A stretch of DNA of 61,270 bases, filler included, from Dugesia japonica (lineage: Eukaryota), in NCBI GenBank assembly GCA_001938525.1. It is 6 parts of 6 records of this genome, joined end to end, with 100 filler letters (N's around TTAATTAATTAA, not from the genome) between each part and the next. Parts side by side here need not be neighbours in the genome. Positions count along the whole stretch, not along the records: positions 49,859 to 61,270 come from MQRL01591143.1; 5 more parts are not named here. One strand, given 5' to 3'. The number at the start of each line of letters is the position of its first letter. The first letter of the stretch is position 1. Below the pieces are notes generated by a model that was not told where the DNA came from, searched no databases, and worked only from the letters and a program-made list of their open reading frames with translations. A program made the position numbers and the translations under genes. Shown here one piece after another: positions 5,951-61,217 of the stretch.

Positions 5951-8850
5951 TGTTAGATGAATCTGTAACATTCATATTTGCATTAAAATAAACAGTTTTC
6001 ATTCTAAGATTTATTCACAACCAAAACAAAAACAACAATATCAATTTGGTTTTTTTTAAACAAACAAAAAACTTTATTATTTAATTCTAACCGAAATTAT
6101 TTAAAAATATTATTAATGAAATTTTGGAAAATAATTCATTAAAAAATTCAATGTTTAAAAAAAATATTCTTTCATTTAATATAAAAGCTTTGATCAAAAT
6201 TTTGGTTTTTTATTGATATTGGATAACTATTCGATATTTTGACCTAGTCTTTGTCAGGAATTGAATTTTTAAATTTATTCAAGATTTATGTTTATAATAG
6301 TAATAATTTTTGAAATAATTTATTTTTTTTAAATTTTGTCTTGGTTTCTGTAATTGGAAGCCCAATTATGCTTGCGTTTTGAAAATAATTCTTGGATTGT
6401 GTTGGAGTTTAGCATTTTTTATTATATTTTGCATGATTTGGCTACATTTCTCATTAATAAAAGGTAATTTAATAACTGTGTTGGTTTTTGGTTTGATTTT
6501 ATTTTGTTTTGTATTTAAAGATAAATATTTTGATATAATTTTATTTGGGTAGTCGCTATTTAAGAGTTTATTTTTTATCAACTTGAGAGGAATCAATTTC
6601 ATTTCTTCATTTGAAGATAGTCTCTCAGCTTGAATTCTTTCACCTTTAATTAGACCAATTTTCTGGCTGATGGTCGTATTACTATTCCAAAGGAGTATAT
6701 GTCCACTGTGAAATGGTTTGATATATACTTGGGTAATTATTATTTTACTAGGTTTCTTTTGAATTAAAGTGTCCAGAAAAAGAATCTGAAATTATTAGTA
6801 CTGTTGGCTAATTCTAGAATGTTCTCTAAGGAGAATTAGTAACAAAGAAAATATCATCTATTTATCTAAACCATAGATGAATTTTTTTGTTTGACTTAAG
6901 AATAATATGATTTTCAATAAAGTTCATGAAAATTATTGCTAGAATTGGAGATAAATTTTACCTATTGCAAGACCACCTTTTGTTTAAAAAGTTGTTTACC
7001 GATGAAAATACTATCAGAAAAGATATAAAAATTGATAAGACATTTGAAATCATTTTTGGTGATCTCTGGAATGTCTGTATGTTCTTTGTATCTTTCAAAG
7101 AANNNNNNNNNNNNNNNNNNNNNNNNNNNNNNNNNNNNNNNNNNNNNNNNNNTTGATAAGACATTTGAAATCATTTTTGGTGATCTCTGGAATGTCTGTA
7201 TGTTCTTTGTATCTTTCAAAGAAGTCGATAACAATATCGGTGACATTTTCAGGTCCTTCAATTAGAATTGATCCATATAGATTTGTTACATCTAATGAAC
7301 CAAATTTATCATCACTTTTCCATTCATAATTTTTAATTCGTTCGATAAACTCATAACTGTTCTTTAAATATGTCGGAATAAAATTTAGTAGTGATTTTAA
7401 TATATCAGCTAAAAGTTTGCATAACGCAGTAGATAGAGTATATTCTTAATTAAGTTTTTAAAAATAATTCATTTAAAATTTCAATGTTCAACAAAAATAT
7501 TCTTAATTAAATTTTTGAAAATAATTCATTCACAAATTTTTATAATCAAAAAATATTTTCAATAAAATCTTTCAACTTTATTTCATAAAGTTAATTTAAT
7601 TATTTATTAAACTATTTTCGTTAACAACTTTGGTCGAACTATCAAAAAATTTAACTGTCTAAAATTCTACTTATATCCCCTCTTTAAGACATTTTTTGAT
7701 CGGTTTTTTGACGTTTCTTCTCGAACTTGTTCCATCTTTGCTTTCTGTCACGAAATTTGTCCTTTGAAGCCTATTTTTCCTTGGCGGCCCGTTTTTAAAG
7801 TTATATCTTTTATTTTTTTGTCTCGTTTTGTTGATGTTGGTACAACATTCTTCCGCCCTGTGTCCAAGTTTCTTGTATCTTTCAAATACAATCTCCGTAC
7901 ATACTCTTTTGATGTGACCAATTTTACCACATTCGAAAACTTTTGGTGGTTTCTTACATGTTAAAGTTTTACTTATATGTCTTTCTTTGTGAAAAGTCCA
8001 ACATTTTATCTGAGCATTCCTGGGACACTCTTTTTTATGTGACCATAACTCTGGCATGTTCAACACTTTGATTCTGCTTTTTTTGTAGCTTTCTCGATAT
8101 TTTTTTTATTGTCTACGACAACTTCTCTACGTGCAGCTCCCACACCGCTATTCACTATGTTGATAGGTTAACTTCTTTCTATTTTCTCAACTAGATAAAG
8201 AATTTCTTTTATATCTTCAACTTTCTTCAATTTTCGCATAATTATCTCTTCTTCTGCTTTTTTGCTATTTGAGCAAATTATTAGCATCTTCGCATTGATT
8301 TTTTCTTTTTTAAAATCTAAATTTGATAAAAGATTATTGATAAAATCTTCCACTTTCTTGAAGTATACTTCTAAGTATTCACCAACACGTCGATAATTTA
8401 TAAGATTTTGAAAATCTTTTATCATATATCATTTGCCTCCAAAGGCTAATCGTAATGTTCATTGATATCTATCAACTTTATTTAGAGTTTTCCTATATGC
8501 CTCTCTTAAGTCTTCGTCAAGCATACTTACTATCAAACGTTCTTGATCTGTTCTGTATATGATGATCTTTTGCTTCAAAGTATCTTTCACATCTCTTTAA
8601 AAAAATTTCCAAATCATCACCTTGACAAAATACCTCCGGCATTAATCGCTCGGTAATTTCTTGGGGTTTTACTGCTGCCACCATGTCAGATGAATCTGTA
8701 ACATTCATCTTTGCATTAAGAAAGGAACACTTTTCATTCTAAGATTTATTCACAACCAAAACAAAAACACAACAATATCAATTTGGTTTTTTAAACAAAT
8801 TTTTAAAACAATTTTATTTAATTCTGACCGAAATTATTTAAAAATTATTA
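5951..8850 (-). mobile_element. gag-only Ty3/Gypsy LTR element (tRNA-Leu PBS), 3' LTR interrupted by a Penelope element
   Basis: LTR copies 8684-~8850 and 5951-~6115 are highly similar. PBS TGGTGGCAGCAGT at 8683-8671 (-). Broken gag ORFs 8517-8708, 8168-8425 and 7671-8066 with degenerate CCHC knuckles (ECGKIGHIKRVC). 3' LTR-type repeats resume at 7441-7626, ending TAACA. Confidence 0.8.
6175..7440 (-). mobile_element. Penelope-like retroelement (RT, thumb and tail), degenerate and 5'-truncated
   Basis: YIPTYLKNSYEF, SLDVTNLYGSI (RT motif A, ~7270-7300), FIGKQLFKQ, FLDTLI, VYIKPFHSG, LLNSDYPNKII and LPFINEK are PLE-type RT/thumb motifs. Tail has a hammerhead-like core at ~6230-6265. Confidence 0.8.
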
Positions 8851-50699: not shown

Positions 50700-53163
50700 T
50701 TCAGTAAACAATGCCTTAATGCAGATAATGCACTAATAAACCATATATTACACGGTTGCTTTGTTAATAATAAAGGTTACAATGCAAATAATACTATAAA
50801 CACTATACACTCATAAATCCTATATACTCATAAACTCTATACATTTATAAATCCTATAATTCACGGTTAGTATGTTAATGCTACACTGTTATTATGTAAA
50901 TAATACACTCATAAACCCAATACATCAGGGGTGGGCAAACTTCTGCGCGCCAAAGCTTTTTATGCGGCCCGTTATGACTTTCATATTTTAAAATAAGATA
51001 TTATTATTTTTTATTTAATAGCTTTTTTTACAATTGATTACCTCATGTAACACTTTCATCACATATCAATACAAATTTCTCATGAAAATTTCTTTTTTAT
51101 TTTAAATAACACACTTATTTTTCCAATTTCAAATCAAATAAAAAAGAATATATTTTTAAAGTCTCAATCATCAAAGTATATTAAATCAATCTTTCTAATA
51201 CCGCTTGTTTTAATAATAATTTTTTATTTTAAAAAAAGAAAAATCAAAAATGAATGTCGTAGTTTTAATTTCGAATGGACTAACAAGTATTTTGTTCCCT
51301 CAAGTAAAAATAAAGCTGTTTGTTTAATATGCCGTGAGACAGTGGCAGTTTTTAAAGAATATAATATAAAAATGCATTTTCAAACAAAACATTCGGAAAA
51401 GTATTCCAATATAAAATAAAAAGATGCAAAAAAAGTCTAAGAGACACATTAAAAATTTTCAACAACAAAATACATTTAATGGTTTGATGTCTATTCAAAA
51501 TTTAGAAACTAAGGCTAGTTTTTTAATTTCACATAAAATTGCAAAACATAAAAAGGGATTTTCTGACGATGAATTTATAAAAGAATGTATGATTGAGGAT
51601 GTTGATATAATTTGTCCAGATATAAAAAATAAATTTTAAAATATTTCATTATCGAGAAGAACTGTAGTTCGCCGAGTTGAAGTTATGGCTGAATACCTAT
51701 TGAAACAAATCTAATTAATTTTTTGAGATAATCGTCAATTTTGCTCATTTCTCGAAAATATTAAATCTGAAAACAACGATGTATTTTATCTTAATATAGT
51801 ATGCATTCATAAAAATATTTACTTATAAGTTTTTTATATAGACATAATAGGTATTTATACAGCAATTTTAAGTTATCTATATATGTAAATGTTACACACT
51901 CATAAACCTTATACACTCATAAACTTTATAAATTTATAAAAAATATTTACTTAAAAGTTTTTTATATAGTCTTATGAATTAATTTTAAAAGAAGTTCAAC
52001 ACTTAAGAATAATTTTTAATAAGGTCTCATACTTATGATTTCTTATAGAAAAGTTAAATGCTTTTTAATTAATTAATTTTAATAAATTAATTTTAATTAA
52101 CTTATTTAATTTTTAGACTGCCTGGGGCATATCCAAAGATATTAAAACTGCCTAATTTCTTGCTTAATTTCTAGACTGCTTAATCTCAAAAATATTAAGA
52201 CTGTCAAATGTTTTGCAATAATAACAAGACTGCCCAATATCAAAAATATCAAGACTACTCAATCTCATATATAAATATCCAGACTGTTCAAGTAAAATCA
52301 ATACTGCCCAATCTCTTGCAAAAATGGAAAATCAATAATATCCTAATCTCATACATAAATATCAAGTCTGCTTAAAAATACATTTATTTTTCAAAAAACA
52401 TAATTTTCAATAAATTCAACATTATATTTAAAAATCAACATTTTTCAAAAAGTTATTACGTCACCCACAACAACAGAAAAATTTCATTTAAATTTTATAA
52501 TCACTGATAATAATTACCTTTACACCCATACCCATTTTTACCGAAGGAAAAAATTATTTAACCTCATTATACTACTTACAAAATTTAACCAATCAAATTA
52601 TCGATTAAAAATTCCTCAATTCACCACCACCCATACACCATCATACTCCCCATCACATCACCTTTTCAACAAGCCATCACTCGCAAATATTCATTAACTA
52701 TCCACAATCCTATAACACTTCAAAAAATCAACGCGTGAGAACTCATACGCTGTGTCAGTGCGCCACTACTCCTTGTAGACCAAACAATCCACCAAAACCC
52801 ATAAGTCCTTTATACAATTTATAGACAATATTTTGATTCCAACATGCCCATAACATAAAACCCAGAAAAAAATTAAACCCAAGATCTCCGCACCTCCCTC
52901 GATTTCACTTTTACTCTTACGCACACACTCCATCCACCTAACCCACTTCAATTTAACTATCTCTTCTTTTCAAACTCACAAATTTTAAAAATCAATTTTC
53001 CTCCACCCCTTTACTCAGGATTAAAATTCCATGATTTGATCAAAAGTTTTATGATCTTGAATATCTTTTTTAAAAAAAACCTCAACATCACATACCAAAA
53101 TACTGGCATAATTATATGAGGGGCGGGGTGATAAAATAAAATTGTAGCAGTGCGTCACTATCT
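50700..53163 (+). repeat. second copy of the repeat-rich putative Polinton terminal block (homologous to 21570-24550)
   Basis: Same order of 42-bp repeats, AAAATATTTACTTATAAG, AAGACTGCCCA repeats, TACTACTTACAAAA..ACCAATCAAA and GCCACTAC..CCTTGTAG..CATAAGTCCTTTA. Confidence 0.75.
50926..51800 (+). mobile_element. hAT transposon (SPIN/GTF2IRD2-like), 5' end and deleted transposase
   Basis: TIR CAGGGGTGGGCAAAC..TGCGGCCCG; KKRKIKNECRSFNFEWTNKYF..CLICRETVAVFKEYN..TKH; FSDDEFIKECM; SLSRRTVVRRV. Confidence 0.88.
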
Positions 53164-56512: not shown

Positions 56513-58966
56513 TGTTAGGTGTACTGTTTAGAAATATTGAAAAATATTTTAAACTGGGAACAGAATCCAAAATATTTATCATAACCAGTGATTATGGAGA
56601 ACAGAACGCAGGTTTTTAAGTAGAAAACCGGAAATTTCGATGAAATAACTTGCAAGATATTATTTGAACAGATGCAGATGATTACCAGAACCATAAGAAC
56701 AAATGTTATGAGGACAATTTTATTATTACAATTATTGCGGGAATAATTATTGGACTTAACCATTGATCGCATTTGAGATTTCACTAAAATAAATGAAAAA
56801 GCTTCGATCAAAATAAAATATATTTTTATAGAAATTCAAATTTTTATAATTATAATAATTATAATAAATTTTTATAATTATAATTTTCAAATAATTATAA
56901 TAAATGATTAATAATTAGGTGAACTAAGGTAATTTGTAATATGATTATAATTTGTACTATTCATATTACATTTTTTAATAATTGATTAATAATCAGGTAA
57001 AATAAGGTAAATGTGTAATATAATTTGTACTGTTCATTATAAATTTATAAATAGCAAAGTTGTAGTGGTAAAATAAATGATATCCCAAAATATTAGTTCT
57101 GATTTGGAAAATGAATTACCAATCGAAGATTTACCTAACATGGTGGCAGCGGTAAATACGGATTCCCTTACAGAGAAGTTATTGCTGAAAGTTTTCTGCA
57201 GAGGAGATGATATTGAAAACTTCATTAAGCGATGTGAATTGTATTTTGAATCTAAAAACATCACCCATGTGAAACAACAGGAGAGATTAGTCTCGTGTTT
57301 GTTAGATCAAGATTTGTTGGAAGAATATGCAAAGATGTTGAACAAAGTTGACGGAATTCAGGCCAATTTACGTACGGAATTTGAGAAAGATAAAGATTTA
57401 AAAAAATTTAGTAAAAAGATTATTTACAAATAAAGATTTTACTGAAATAAAAATGGTAGCAAAGATGCTAGTATATTGTTCAGATAACAAAACAATTGAA
57501 GAAGAAGCGACTTTGCGAAAACGAGAAAATATAGAAGAAATTAAAGAAACAATAACGTTAGTAGATCGAGTAGAGAAAAAATAGATCGAGTTGATGCAGT
57601 TAGAAGTTACGCGAGAGTTACAAATCAGAAAGCTCTAACTTTCATATTGACGACAAAGAAACCAATTAAATCGAAATTTCAGACATGGATTAATTATCTG
57701 AGCAGTTTAGACATAGTTTTGGAATATAGAAAAGGAATTCAACATGCTAATACAGATAAATTATCTAGACCAAGATGTGAAGTATATATACAGTGTCAAA
57801 TGTCACATGAAGATGCCAAGAAACGGAAAATTTAAACGAGAATACTGAACATAATCGACCATTACAGTAAATATCTGGTTCTTATACGATTGCCTAGACA
57901 AGACGAAGAAACAATACGAAAAGTTATTTTTGAAAAGTGAATACTGAGATTTGGATGTCCAAGATAAATAAGATTAGATTATGGAAAAGCTTTTGAATGA
58001 AAGAGTTTGCACTGAAATAAGATATTAAACTTTGCTTTTCGAGTCCCTATCATCATAATGCAAACGGACAAATTGAGAGACAGTTCAGGACAATTCGAAA
58101 TTTGATTAAGGCAACACTTCATGAAAGAAAGACAACAGATTGAGCAGATCGTTTACCCGAAATAGAATTTAAAATGAACGCAACAAAACAGAAGACGACT
58201 GAAAATAGCCCGCCTGAGATCGTTTTTGGAAAGAAAATTAGGAGAAAAGTGGTAAGAGTCAGTCGTTTCAGATGTGATTACTGAAAGAGAATTCAAAGTG
58301 AGCAATTTAGTACTCATCAAAGTAGAAATAAAAGTCAAGACAGATTTGAAGGACCTTATCAAATAATTAAGAAAATTCATGAAAAGTGGTATGCCGTACA
58401 ATGAGAAAATTAGCAACGATTAGAAATAAATGCGGAAAACGTAGGAAGTTTCTTAGGAAGGGTGATATGAGGAAATAAATAATTAAATAATTTCAACCAA
58501 TAGAAATTGAGTTATATAAATGTTCATATTGAAATGCTTGTACACCCATCCCTCGCTTAACACGGTTTCGCTTTAACGCGGTTTTTAAAAAACAGTTTTG
58601 TTCGATTAAATCTTGCTTTGCAGACGTGCGCACAGCTGTGGAAAATTCTACGAATAACGGTCAGGGTATATCTGGACAATAACTGTCCATTTTAAAAGTA
58701 AAAAAAATTTCAAGATTGTCTGAATATAATCGCATTGGCAATAACAGACATTAAAAAATCTACTTTAAATGCATGTTGGAAAGCATATATTTGTTAGTCT
58801 CGCTTAACACGGTGATCTAGCATAACCTATCTTCCGTGTTAAGCGAGGGAAGGATGTATTTCGATATTATTTATATTATGAAACATGGTTTGTAGAAGTA
58901 AAATAAATGATGTCTATATTAATAGTGATTTGCAAAATGAATAACCAATTGAAGATTTACCTAACA
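56513..58966 (+). mobile_element. internally deleted Ty3/Gypsy element (tRNA-Leu PBS)
   Basis: 5' LTR 56513-57140 bounded by a perfect 8-bp IR TGTTAGGT/ACCTAACA; PBS TGGTGGCAGCGGT 57141-57153; gag; RH end FQTWINYL..YRKGIQHANTDKLSR; integrase NGQIERQFRTI and FEGPYQI; PPT ~58455-58465; last ~75 bp of the LTR repeated at 58890-58966. Confidence 0.88.
58543..58856. mobile_element. Tigger/pogo-type MITE, 314 bp, TA target duplication
   Basis: 23-bp TIRs CACCCATCCCTCGCTTAACACGG and CCGTGTTAAGCGAGGGAAGGATG (21/23 match), TA on both sides, subterminal CGCTTAACACGG repeats. Confidence 0.9.
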
Positions 58967-58967
58967 A

Positions 58968-59638
58968 TACATAAGACATTTCTCGTCTGCCGTTATGAAG
59001 CAGTTAAAAAATGGTTCCTTTTTGTGGTGGTTTAGGTGCTTGTAGCATATCGAAGACCTTAGCGATTTATTAGAATCACTGAGAAACTTACCAAAAGATT
59101 TCAAGTGCCGTTGAAGAAGTATTTGTACTTTCTAAAATTTCCTCAATTGTATAAATAGGATCTTCTTCCACAACATACCGCAATTTATCTTTATCAAATT
59201 GAACAGAACGACCACAATCCGGGGCACTTTGAAGGTCAAAATTTCCTCTCCAAAATTAGTTGAACCATCCCTGACACTTCCGAATGTCTTAGGAATCTGG
59301 ATATATCACATTATATTTGCAGTTGACCACAATTAAACTGAAACAGAATAATATATCTGTGCTTCTCTTCAATTTTACATTTATTATTTGTCATTTTTCT
59401 TTAAATTTGAAATTTCTCAAAATTCGCAAATTAATGNNNNNNNGATTTAGATAATTAAAACAACTGATTATTATTAATAATCATATATAAAACAGGTTAC
59501 ATATGCTGCTAATTTTGCATCTTCTGATAAAAACGACATTACTTATGTGTACTCCTAATAAAAAAGGAGTCCACAAATTTTTGTGTTGAGCCGAAGACTT
59601 CCGTGATCAAAATCCGCCTGAGAAAAAGTAACAACCGA
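58968..59638 (-). mobile_element. mariner 5' half, degenerate
   Basis: WFN.FWRGNFDLQSAPDCGRSVQFDKDKLRYVVEEDP HTH region; TIR-like TA|TCGGTTG..GCGGATTTT at 59638-59608. Confidence 0.7.
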
Positions 59639-60336: not shown

Positions 60337-61217
60337 TCAATGACGATTCGATCTGAAATGCGGATTATTGCTATTGCTGTTATTTATTCGCGATTTACTG
60401 TTTTCGGCATTTTGTAAAATCATTTCGGCCGTATTAGAACGTGTAGAATGAGCCAATTCTGCAATTTCATTGGATTTTGTACCTGTCTCGGATTTCTTTA
60501 AAGCAGTTAAAGTCGATCGAAATTTATGTAATTTGGTGTTCATAAAATCTACCGAGTTCGATTCAGTGATCGTATTTGTTGATACATTTGAACTACTGCT
60601 TTGAATTCGACCGTCGTATTCTGAGTGATTTAAACGAAATGAGGTATTATAACTGTTTCTCTGTTGAGACACAGAGCTATTGGATTTGATAATTTTTTCT
60701 GTTTGAAACTGTTGTGGTATTGGCACTTTTTCATTAATGTCAGCACCAAATGTGATATCATCATGTGAACTATCATCCAAAAGATCACGTAAATGAGACG
60801 GAAACATCGATAAATCACTGATAAAATCCAAATCACATTGATCTTGATTAAGTTCGGAAAAGAGATCATGAATGCTTGGTTCACAAAAGTTGGCATTTAT
60901 GTCATCTCTAGGATGTGTTGTTTCAAGATATGAATCTGTATAGGAGCAAGGCAAGTAAGAAAATTGGTTATCATTCGGAAGTACTTCGTTAATTAAGCTG
61001 CTCTCATCAATAATAGTCGGTTTATGAACATCTCTAAATTGTACATGGAAGTGAATACCTCGACGGCGCAATTTCATGTGACCCAAATGAGATTGTATTT
61101 CTGACAATAATTCATAAAGCTGATCGGCTTGTTGTGTTCTGGTTAAATCACTTGGCAACATACTACAACAAACTTCACTAATCCATGGAATGTCCGTTAG
61201 CAAATCCCAGTCAGTTC
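60337..61217 (-). CDS. terminal coding exon of a host gene, product unknown (Ser/Asp/Asn-rich tail)
   Basis: Intact ~293-codon frame from the acceptor TTTTCTAG|GA (61217) to TGA at 60337; no TE motifs; the gene continues beyond the window. Confidence 0.75.

What the first reader, a model, noticed from the sequence alone, without database searches (positions are those of the whole stretch)
57131..57260. Gypsy family whose Gag start codon is built from the LTR/PBS junction, so the tRNA primer site encodes the Gag N-terminus
Seen: the LTR ends ..ACCTAAC-A(57140) and the PBS TGGTGGCAGCGGT follows with no spacer, reading ATG GTG GCA GCG GTA = MVAAV in frame with gag. The same occurs at 8684 (-, MVAAVKPQ), 26821 (MVTAVNID) and 27253 (MATNASMD). 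In the three intact starts the junction Met is exactly 21 residues before the conserved GDD-x-E-x-F..C..YFE capsid block. The 57140 copy has no other Met in that interval. Known: TGGTGGCAGCGGT is complementary to the 3' end of metazoan tRNA-Leu(AAG/TAG); the PBS is recopied from the primer during reverse transcription; Ty1 has a PBS inside gag but its ATG lies within the LTR. Inference: the first codons of Gag are tRNA-templated, and primer annealing would cover the start codon, a possible translate-versus-replicate switch. Caveat: any CA|TGG junction spells ATG, and the copies share ancestry.
Basis: partly seen in the sequence, partly recalled or inferred. Interest (0 to 1): 0.8.

Follow-up and report, generated by a model that had tools for sequence, protein, structure and literature searches.

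The report
Gag reading frame opens inside LTR
A dead copy of a small Ty3/gypsy retrotransposon whose Gag reading frame runs through the end of the LTR and the tRNA-Leu primer site; in this copy and all eleven relatives checked the frame opens at an ATG further up in the LTR, as in yeast Ty1, so the ATG at the LTR/primer-site junction is probably not the main start.

Summary
The sequence is as described. The LTR ends ...CCTAACA at 57140, and TGGTGGCAGCGGT follows with no spacer. The junction ATG is in frame with a Gag remnant. The 13 bases equal the start of a published probe for the 3' end of tRNA-Leu(AAG).

An in-frame ATG lies 21 codons upstream at 57077, overlapping the AATAAA signal.

I found 30 related Gag proteins and read DNA for ten further elements. 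All 11 elements, counting the window, have an open in-frame ATG 7-24 codons upstream of the junction. Chance gives about 0.19 per element. The LTR-encoded tail is acidic in all 21 proteins that have one. Six elements carry out-of-frame ATGs between the two in-frame ATGs. In four relatives the upstream ATG lies 14-47 nt past AATAAA, so it should be transcribed.

The best reading is a Ty1-like layout in a Ty3/gypsy lineage. Gag starts in the LTR, and the junction Met and the primer-site codons are internal. The junction ATG may be a secondary start.

The window copy is internally deleted and full of stops. Interest is modest.

The parts
57036..57140 (+). Recognisable 3' part of the 5' LTR (late U3/R/U5). 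The true 5' boundary lies further upstream, roughly 56890-56950, and is not resolved.
   Evidence: Gapped alignment with 58866-58966 scores 115 against shuffles of 51+-5. BLAST gives 57060-57140 vs 58890-58966 at 83%. Both copies end ...CCTAACA.
57072..57077 (+). AATAAA poly(A) signal in the LTR. Its last A is the first base of the upstream ATG.
   Evidence: Invariant columns in the alignment of six LTR ends of the Leu-primer subgroup. Positions.
57077..57079 (+). In-frame ATG inside the LTR, 21 codons before the junction. This is the proposed start of the Gag ORF in the ancestor of this copy.
   Evidence: ORF 57077..57433. The same arrangement is found in 10 further elements.
57140..57142 (+). 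Junction ATG: the A is the last base of the LTR and the TG are the first bases of the primer binding site. It is an in-frame, internal Met, possibly a secondary start.
   Evidence: Its context is A at -3 and G at +4 in all elements.
57141..57153 (+). Primer binding site, 13 nt, complementary to the 3' end of tRNA-Leu(AAG). It is translated as part of Met-Val-Ala-Ala-Val.
   Evidence: Identical to the first 13 bases of the Leu(AAG) 3'-end probe printed in PMC6103689. One match in the piece against 0.04 expected.
57077..57572 (+). gag remnant, broken. It covers residues 14-187 of a 387-residue intact relative, in two frames, with one stop inside the matches. The zinc-knuckle part is missing.
   Evidence: tblastn with P0002: outer bounds 57122-57572, E 8e-41, 53% identity. 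phmmer found 27 relatives.
57602..58467 (+). pol remnant, broken. Only the end of RNase H and the integrase remain, shortened, in two frames, with ten stops inside the matches. Protease and reverse transcriptase are absent.
   Evidence: tblastn with the pol C-terminal ORFs of L001, L006 and L010 gives E 1e-37 to 1e-46. The pol N-terminal queries give no match.
58454..58462 (+). Purine-rich stretch just before the 3' LTR, the likely polypurine tract.
   Evidence: Read. It holds the same position as the purine runs before the LTR in L001, L006 and L011.
58463..58966 (+). 3' LTR, interrupted by a nested insertion. The LTR proper is about 186 nt.
   Evidence: 58474-58530 matches the front of the LTR of relative L002 with score 56 against shuffles of 37+-4. 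58866-58966 matches the 5' LTR.
58541..58858 (.). Nested insertion of about 318 nt bounded by about 25-nt inverted repeats, MITE-like and non-coding. It is not part of the element.
   Evidence: Self-BLAST gives 58541-58565 vs 58858-58834 at 92%. Sequence read.

Best explanation
The window holds a dead, internally deleted copy of a small-LTR Ty3/gypsy retrotransposon. In this lineage the Gag ORF opens at an ATG inside the 5' LTR, in R or U5. In the tRNA-Leu subgroup that ATG overlaps the AATAAA signal. The ORF then reads through the last 7-24 codons of the LTR, the LTR terminus and the primer binding site, and continues into the capsid domain. Three things follow. First, the junction ATG exists because an LTR ending in CA abuts a primer site beginning TGG. 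It is conserved because both halves are cis-acting signals, and it is in frame because the ORF passes through it. Second, the LTR terminus and the primer site fix about six Gag residues: Asn/His/Tyr, then Met, then four residues that depend on the primer. These sit in an N-terminal tail that is predicted to be disordered. Third, a ribosome reading from the LTR-internal AUG and a tRNA annealed to the primer site cannot occupy the same RNA, as in Ty1. The junction AUG has a good context and may serve as a secondary start by leaky scanning. Shown: the anatomy, the frame conservation, the acidic tail and the tRNA match. Inferred: which AUG ribosomes use, the positions of the transcription start and poly(A) site, and any regulatory consequence.
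For: An in-frame ATG in the LTR is open to the junction in the window and in 10 further independent elements. The distances are 21, 19, 24/20, 16, 15, 19, 16, 7, 16, 12 and 19/7 codons. Composition-matched shuffles give 0.17-0.21 per element, and the product for the first eight is 1.6e-6. The control frame has an open ATG in only 4 of 8. At the protein level, 21 of the 24 sequences with the junction Met carry a 7-26 residue extension. Of the three that start at the junction, one has an uncalled in-frame ATG 16 codons upstream in its DNA (L003). One sits on a contig that is cut 24 nt upstream with the frame still open (L009). The third was not examined. The extension has a protein-like signature: 22% Asp+Glu against 7% expected, 3% Lys+Arg against 14% expected, and net charge -1 to -5 in all 21. 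G+C rises from 17% to 32% in the last 60 nt of the LTRs. In the Leu subgroup the distance from the upstream ATG to the junction varies (16-24 codons) but is always a multiple of three. Out-of-frame ATGs 14-32 nt before the junction occur in 6 of 11 elements, including intact ones. In L004, L011, L012 and L014 the upstream ATG begins 47, 28, 26 and 14 nt after AATAAA. That is at or beyond the expected cleavage site, so it lies in late R or U5 and must be at the 5' end of the transcript. The ATG lies inside the LTR: contigs L001, L006, L010 and L011 run from the pol end through a purine tract and the LTR into the primer site and gag. The AlphaFold model of intact Gag P0002 has residues 1-27 below pLDDT 50 and helices from residue 29. 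Its best fold matches are dArc and Arc capsids. Ty1 precedent: a 53-nt 5' UTR with the primer site at nt 95-104 inside GAG (PMC5454406).
Against: No transcript ends were mapped. In the Leu subgroup the upstream ATG overlaps AATAAA, so it is in the mRNA only if transcription starts upstream of the hexamer. TATA-like motifs suggest this for L001 and L006 but are equivocal for the window copy. The tail is conserved in charge and frame but not in sequence. The junction ATG has an invariant strong context, so it could be used as well. In the window's own 3' LTR a 4-nt length difference puts the homologous ATG out of frame, which I read as decay. Database proteins are gene-caller predictions. The elements share ancestry, so the multiplied probability overstates independence.
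Confidence: 0.7

Rival explanations
1. The junction ATG, built from the last base of the LTR and the first two of the primer site, is the Gag initiation codon. The primer-site codons form the N-terminus, and tRNA annealing masks the start codon.
For: The junction ATG is in frame in every relative and has A at -3 and G at +4 everywhere. Three database proteins are predicted to start there. In the Leu subgroup the upstream ATG could lie upstream of the transcription start if AATAAA sits in U3. The TATA-like motifs of the window copy are compatible with a start close to 57077.
Against: It does not explain why the frame is open to an ATG in 11 of 11 elements, nor why the LTR-encoded peptide is acidic in 21 of 21. 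In 6 of 11 elements out-of-frame ATGs lie 14-32 nt before the junction. That is too close to the LTR end to be outside any transcript with a workable R+U5. In four relatives the upstream ATG lies beyond the expected poly(A) site and so must be transcribed.
Confidence: 0.1
2. Dual initiation. Both the LTR-internal AUG and the junction AUG are used, through a short leader and leaky scanning. This gives a long Gag with an acidic tail and a short Gag that begins with the primer-site-encoded residues.
For: Both ATGs are conserved and in frame. The junction context is strong. If the transcription start is close to the upstream AUG, the leader would be short enough to favour bypass.
Against: The junction ATG is conserved anyway, for nucleotide-level reasons (LTR terminus plus primer site), so its conservation says nothing about use. 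Intervening out-of-frame ATGs in six elements would capture ribosomes that bypass the first AUG. There is no expression data.
Confidence: 0.17
3. The upstream open frame and ATG are chance features of AT-rich LTR ends, exaggerated by gene callers that take the longest ORF. Nothing upstream of the junction is translated.
For: Single elements have about a 0.19 chance of an open in-frame ATG. The control frame shows one in 4 of 8. The elements are related.
Against: All 11 elements are positive although their upstream sequences are too diverged to align outside the AATAAA and the terminus. Length differences come in multiples of three. The acidic composition and the rise in G+C are not expected from non-coding AT-rich DNA.
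Confidence: 0.03

Closest known systems
Saccharomyces Ty1 (and Ty2), Ty1/copia group
   Same: GAG starts inside the 5' LTR. The primer binding site directly follows the LTR and lies inside the GAG coding sequence. Ty1 RNA has a 53-nt 5' UTR and the primer site at nt 95-104, about 14 codons into GAG (PMC5454406). One stretch of RNA therefore serves translation, packaging and priming, which creates the same conflict between ribosome and primer.
   Different: Ty1 uses initiator tRNA-Met, and integrase precedes RT in its pol. Here the primer site matches tRNA-Leu(AAG), or another tRNA in the sister subgroup. The pol order is PR-RT-RNase H-IN, which is Ty3/gypsy. The LTRs are much shorter (about 137-305 nt). 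In the Leu subgroup the start codon overlaps the poly(A) signal.
Canonical Ty3/gypsy elements and retroviruses (gag AUG downstream of the primer site in a 5' leader)
   Same: LTR-PBS-gag-pol-PPT-LTR plan. Gag has a capsid fold like dArc/Arc and CCHC knuckles like retroviral nucleocapsids. The primer site abuts the LTR.
   Different: There is no untranslated leader between the primer site and gag. The ORF begins before the primer site, inside the LTR. I found no description of this layout for a Ty3/gypsy element in eight full-text searches, which does not prove there is none.
Echinococcus ta-TRIM (non-autonomous LTR element)
   Same: [quoted passage not shown] So tRNA-Leu priming by invertebrate LTR elements is not unusual.
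   Different: TRIMs carry no gag, so there is no coding overlap.
BARE (barley copia-like element) and retroviral leader switches
   Same: They address the same conflict between translation and reverse transcription of one transcript (PMC3735527 abstract; FIV leader conformers in PMC3362945).
   Different: Those systems resolve the conflict with distinct RNA pools or alternative leader structures. Here folding of the U5/primer-site/gag-start region in five elements is no more stable than shuffles, with z from -1.4 to +1.1.

Membership tests
Ty3/gypsy (Metaviridae-type) LTR retrotransposon | Two long terminal repeats in direct orientation with matching termini | tested here: met
   57036-57140 and 58866-58966 align at about 83% and both end ...CCTAACA. 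The front of the 3' LTR matches the LTR of relative L002. The 5' boundary of the 5' LTR is not resolved.
Ty3/gypsy (Metaviridae-type) LTR retrotransposon | Primer binding site next to the 5' LTR, complementary to a tRNA 3' end | tested here: met
   57141-57153 equals the first 13 bases of the published tRNA-Leu(AAG) 3'-end probe. No host tRNA gene was available in the piece.
Ty3/gypsy (Metaviridae-type) LTR retrotransposon | pol domain order protease, RT, RNase H, integrase | tested here: met
   Shown in relatives. L010 and L014 pol products carry RVT_1, RT_RNaseH, Integrase_H2C2 and rve in that order. L004 and L007 carry protease then RVT_1, and L001 and L010 carry RNase H then integrase. In the window only RNase H and integrase remnants survive.
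Ty3/gypsy (Metaviridae-type) LTR retrotransposon | Gag with a retroelement capsid fold and CCHC nucleocapsid knuckles | tested here: met
   Relatives have 1-3 matched zf-CCHC stretches. The PDB profile search hits nucleocapsids. The best fold matches of the model are dArc2, dArc1 and Arc capsids, at weak E of 0.01-0.05 with probability about 1. The window copy keeps only the N-terminal half of the capsid region.
Ty3/gypsy (Metaviridae-type) LTR retrotransposon | Target-site duplication flanking the element | tested here: inconclusive
   The 3' flank is read, but the start of the 5' LTR cannot be placed, so no duplication could be compared.
Ty1-type layout (gag opens in the LTR, primer site inside gag) | In-frame ATG inside the 5' LTR, upstream of the primer site, open to gag | tested here: met
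   Window ORF 57077..57433. 11 of 11 elements. Shuffle control.
Ty1-type layout (gag opens in the LTR, primer site inside gag) | That ATG lies in the transcript and is used for initiation | not testable with these tools
   Only indirect support: the position relative to AATAAA in four relatives, the acidic tail, and the intervening out-of-frame ATGs.
Ty1/copia group (membership, as opposed to layout) | Integrase before RT in pol; initiator tRNA-Met primer | tested here: not met
   RT precedes integrase, and the primer site matches tRNA-Leu(AAG). It works like Ty1 in this one respect but is not a member.
   24 of 24 relatives that cover the column.
   An upstream in-frame ATG is present in 11 of 11 elements, and out-of-frame ATGs lie between the two in 6 of 11.

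The most novel reading that the evidence does not exclude
A metazoan Ty3/gypsy lineage packs the poly(A) signal, the Gag start codon, the integrase-recognised LTR terminus and the tRNA primer site into about 70 translated nucleotides. It makes two Gag isoforms, one from the LTR-internal AUG and one from the junction AUG. The ratio between them, and the choice between translation and priming, would be set by whether the tRNA is annealed across the junction AUG. A change of primer tRNA during evolution would then directly rewrite the N-terminus of the short isoform.
Probability: 0.1. Interest if true: 0.6.

Novelty: new member of a known kind. Interest (0 to 1): 0.3.

Why it matters
The layout shows how tightly cis-acting signals and coding sequence can overlap in a very small LTR element. 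The last bases of the LTR and the tRNA-complementary primer site are read as Gag codons. As a result the primer choice is visible in the protein: Val-Ala-Ala-Val with the Leu-type site in 5 sequences, and Ala-Thr with the TGGCGACCAC-type site in 16. The overlap is tolerated because it falls in a tail that is predicted to be disordered. For annotation it gives a practical warning. Gene callers and human readers will place the Gag start of such elements inconsistently: at the junction ATG in three of the 23 database proteins that have it, and upstream in 20. LTR-masking pipelines will also cut off the true start. It also extends the Ty1-type problem, where ribosome and primer compete for the same RNA stretch, to a Ty3/gypsy lineage of animals. 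It does not reveal a new mechanism, and the copy in the window is long dead.

Tried and rejected
These steps led nowhere or were rejected.
- Pfam on the window's Gag fragment, pol pieces and neighbouring ORFs gave no family.
- A tRNA scan of the piece found none, so the primer could not be matched to a host gene.
- The search for homologous proteins with a nine-sequence Gag profile returned only six proteins, three of them new. The family is thinly sampled, and the exhaustive phmmer search was the productive one.
- The PDB profile search matched only the zinc knuckles.
- RNA folding of the U5/primer-site/gag-start region in five elements was no better than shuffles. I therefore dropped a structured riboswitch-like model.
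- Promoter reading by eye (TATA-like motifs) was too equivocal to place the transcription start, especially in the window copy, whose 5' LTR carries an internal duplication.
- The front of the 5' LTR could not be aligned to the 3' LTR or to L002 above shuffle level, so there is no target-site duplication and no full LTR length for this copy.
- I suspected BEL/Pao because of the three zinc knuckles. I rejected this because pol shows the Ty3/gypsy domain set and no Pao protease.
- I suspected a mariner remnant at 59000-59300 on the minus strand. Pfam did not support it.
- The primer of the sister subgroup: an 11-base match to a primer site labelled Arg or Trp in HERV9 (PMC4724089). I leave it unassigned.
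- Eight full-text searches found no report of this layout in a Ty3/gypsy element.
Full report
**1. What is in the window**

The LTR ends ...CCTAACA at 57140, and TGGTGGCAGCGGT follows at 57141-57153 with no spacer. The ATG formed across the junction opens Met-Val-Ala-Ala-Val in a frame that stays open to 57433. The position of the LTR end is secure. A second copy of the last ~105 nt of the LTR ends with the same ...CCTAACA at 58966 and then continues into unrelated sequence. The 13-nt string occurs once in the piece, against 0.04 expected.

**2. The primer**

The string equals the first 13 bases of a probe that a paper prints for the 3' end of human tRNA-Leu(AAG) (PMC6103689). In relative L001 the identity extends to 14 bases. 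The same string begins the internal region of the Echinococcus ta-TRIM element (PMC4558846). No tRNA gene lies in the piece, so the host's own tRNA was not compared.

**3.

The frame is open before the junction. The ORF listing gives ORF 57077..57433, 118 residues. Its ATG lies inside the LTR, 21 codons before the junction ATG, and its A is the last base of an AATAAA hexamer (57072-57077). The 3' LTR has the same AATAAA-ATG but differs in length by 4 nt downstream, so there the ATG is out of frame with the LTR end. The two LTRs are about 17% diverged, so I read this as decay.

**4. State of this copy**

Only about 1.8 kb separates the two LTR ends. tblastn with natural ORFs of relatives (only scores, counts and outer bounds were kept) shows two remnants.
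- A gag remnant at 57122-57572 covers residues 14-187 of a 387-residue Gag. It is in two frames, with one stop inside the matches.
- A shortened RNase H-end/integrase remnant at 57602-58467 is in two frames, with ten stops inside the matches.

The zinc-knuckle part of gag, the protease and the reverse transcriptase are absent. The 3' LTR starts near 58463, after a purine-rich stretch. It is split by a ~318-nt insertion bounded by inverted repeats at 58541-58858. The copy cannot express Gag, so the question of the start codon concerns its family.

**5. Relatives**

An exhaustive phmmer search with the 118-residue ORF found 27 proteins. A profile search added three more. Full-length members are Gags of 350-410 residues with CCHC knuckles.

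I looked up the contigs that encode eleven of these proteins, with 1.5-kb flanks. They are anonymous assembly contigs, read as they stand.

Neighbouring pol products carry protease, RVT_1, RNase H, Integrase_H2C2 and rve in that order. The family is therefore Ty3/gypsy, not BEL/Pao and not copia.

Several contigs run from the pol end through a purine tract and the LTR into the primer site and gag. These give LTR lengths of 283 nt (L001), about 305 nt (L006) and about 137 nt (L011).

**6. The junction across the family**

In an alignment of the N-termini, 24 of 31 sequences have Met at the junction column. The other seven start downstream or differ there.
- The residue before the Met is Asn in 18, His in 2 and Tyr in 1. 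These are all N-A-Y codons, as expected if the LTR ends in A-C/T-A.
- The four residues after the Met are Val-Ala-Ala-Val in 5 (the Leu-type primer site). They begin Ala-Thr in 16, Ala-Asn in 2 and Ala-Ala in 1.
- The DNA of the Ala-Thr group shows a TGGCGACCAC-type primer site. It shares 11 bases with a site labelled Arg or Trp in the HERV9 literature (PMC4724089). I leave that assignment open.

So the primer site is translated throughout the family, and the protein follows the primer.

**7. The upstream ATG is a family trait**

Eleven independent elements have enough upstream DNA: the window, L001, L002, L003, L004=L005, L006=L007, L008, L010, L011, L012=L013 and L014. In every one the junction frame is open upstream to an in-frame ATG. 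The distances are 21, 19, 24/20, 16, 15, 19, 16, 7, 16, 12 and 19/7 codons. A stop often stands directly before that ATG.
- Shuffles of the upstream 120 nt give such an ATG in 17-21% of cases per element. The product for the first eight is 1.6e-6. Shared ancestry makes this optimistic, but the upstream sequences are too diverged to align except at AATAAA and the terminus.
- One control frame shows an open ATG in 4 of 8. The other is always closed by the TAA of the terminus.
- Of the 24 sequences with the junction Met, 21 carry a 7-26 residue extension.
- Three start at the junction. For one (P0004) the DNA shows an uncalled in-frame ATG 16 codons upstream. For another (P0029) the contig ends 24 nt upstream with the frame still open. 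The third was not examined.

**8. Signs that the extension is translated**

- Its composition is not what the bases alone predict. Asp+Glu is 22% against 7% expected, and Lys+Arg is 3% against 14%. Net charge is -1 to -5 in all 21, including the five of the Leu subgroup. G+C is 32% in the last 60 nt of the LTRs against 17% further upstream.
- In the Leu subgroup the ATG-to-junction distance varies from 16 to 24 codons but stays a multiple of three.
- Six of 11 elements, including intact ones, have out-of-frame ATGs 14-32 nt before the junction. These must lie in any transcript with a workable R+U5. The junction AUG is therefore not the first AUG there.
- In L004, L011, L012 and L014 the upstream ATG begins 47, 28, 26 and 14 nt after AATAAA. 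That is at or beyond the expected cleavage site, hence in late R or U5, which by definition is at the 5' end of the RNA.
- In the Leu subgroup the ATG overlaps, or in L008 closely follows, the hexamer, so it is transcribed only if the start site lies upstream of the hexamer. TATA-like motifs suggest this for L001 and L006 but are equivocal for the window copy.

**9. Structure**

An AlphaFold model of intact Gag P0002 (nine-sequence alignment, mean pLDDT 56.6) has residues 1-27 below pLDDT 50. Those residues are the LTR-encoded tail, the junction Met and the primer-site residues. A helical domain follows, with pLDDT 79-89 over residues 31-100. Its best PDB fold matches are dArc2, dArc1 and Arc capsids, then copia and PNMA2 capsids. 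E-values are weak (0.01-0.05) with probability about 1. So the residues dictated by cis-acting DNA are predicted to lie in a disordered tail before the capsid.

The near-constant spacing from the junction Met to the conserved block simply reflects homologous coding sequence. That spacing is 28 residues to the first conserved Phe in the window, P0004 and P0006, and 26-27 in P0008 and P0010, counted by eye from the N-termini printed.

**10. Mechanism**

The best-supported reading is a Ty1-like layout in a Ty3/gypsy lineage. Gag starts in the LTR, and the LTR terminus and the primer site are translated. An elongating ribosome and an annealed primer tRNA therefore exclude each other on one RNA. 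For Ty1 the 5' UTR is 53 nt and the primer site is at nt 95-104 inside GAG (PMC5454406).

The junction AUG has A at -3 and G at +4 in every element. It may act as a secondary start, but its conservation is explained at the nucleotide level and says nothing about use. Folding of the region in five elements is no more stable than shuffles, so there is no sign of a structural switch.

That the primer site is partly recopied from the tRNA during plus-strand synthesis is established retroviral biology. It applies to these codons whichever AUG is used.

**11. Verdict**

What remains is a modest finding: a known layout (Ty1) turns up in a thinly sampled animal Ty3/gypsy family, the primer choice is visible in the protein, and in one subgroup the start codon overlaps the poly(A) signal. 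I found no prior description of this for Ty3/gypsy in eight full-text searches, which is weak evidence of novelty.

Noticed in passing
window 58541-58858: An insertion of about 318 nt lies inside the 3' LTR. It is bounded by ~25-nt inverted repeats (58541-58565 and 58834-58858, 92% complementary), has a third partial copy of the repeat core near 58800, and has no ORF. It looks like a MITE nested in the dead element.
   Followed up: partly
window 56946-56980 and 57019-57053: The 5' LTR region carries a direct repeat 73 nt apart (35 nt, 83% identity). This is an internal duplication that is not seen in the 3' LTR, and it is one reason why the front of the 5' LTR cannot be aligned.
   Followed up: no
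window 50779-50867 and 51868-51956: Two short arrays of a 17-nt tandem unit lie about 1.06 kb apart in direct orientation. They may be the ends of another repeat element.
   Followed up: no
window 60337-61203 (-): An open frame of 288 residues, rich in Ser and Asn, with no Pfam family. It may be a host exon or another decayed element.
   Followed up: partly
L001, L002, L006, L008 and window 57072-57079: In all five elements of the tRNA-Leu subgroup the AATAAA hexamer is an invariant alignment block. The upstream in-frame ATG overlaps it (AATAAATG) or follows it within a few bases. The TAA inside the hexamer is then the in-frame stop directly before the start codon.
   Followed up: yes
L003, L004, L009, L010, L011, L012, L014 (junction regions): The sister subgroup uses a different primer site (TGGCGACCAC-type, with one or two variant bases in some elements) in the same frame. 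The Gag residues after the junction Met change with the primer: Ala-Thr in 16 sequences against Val-Ala-Ala-Val in 5.
   Followed up: yes
L011 1412-1548; L001 1276-1558; L006 1117-1421: The LTRs of this family are very short (about 137, 283 and 305 nt). In L011 the pol stop codon overlaps the first bases of the LTR.
   Followed up: partly
L012 vs L013, about 100-150 nt upstream of the junction: Two contigs from different samples encode the identical Gag. They are identical through the last ~95 nt before the junction and differ further upstream in the LTR, apparently by an extra stretch in L013.
   Followed up: no
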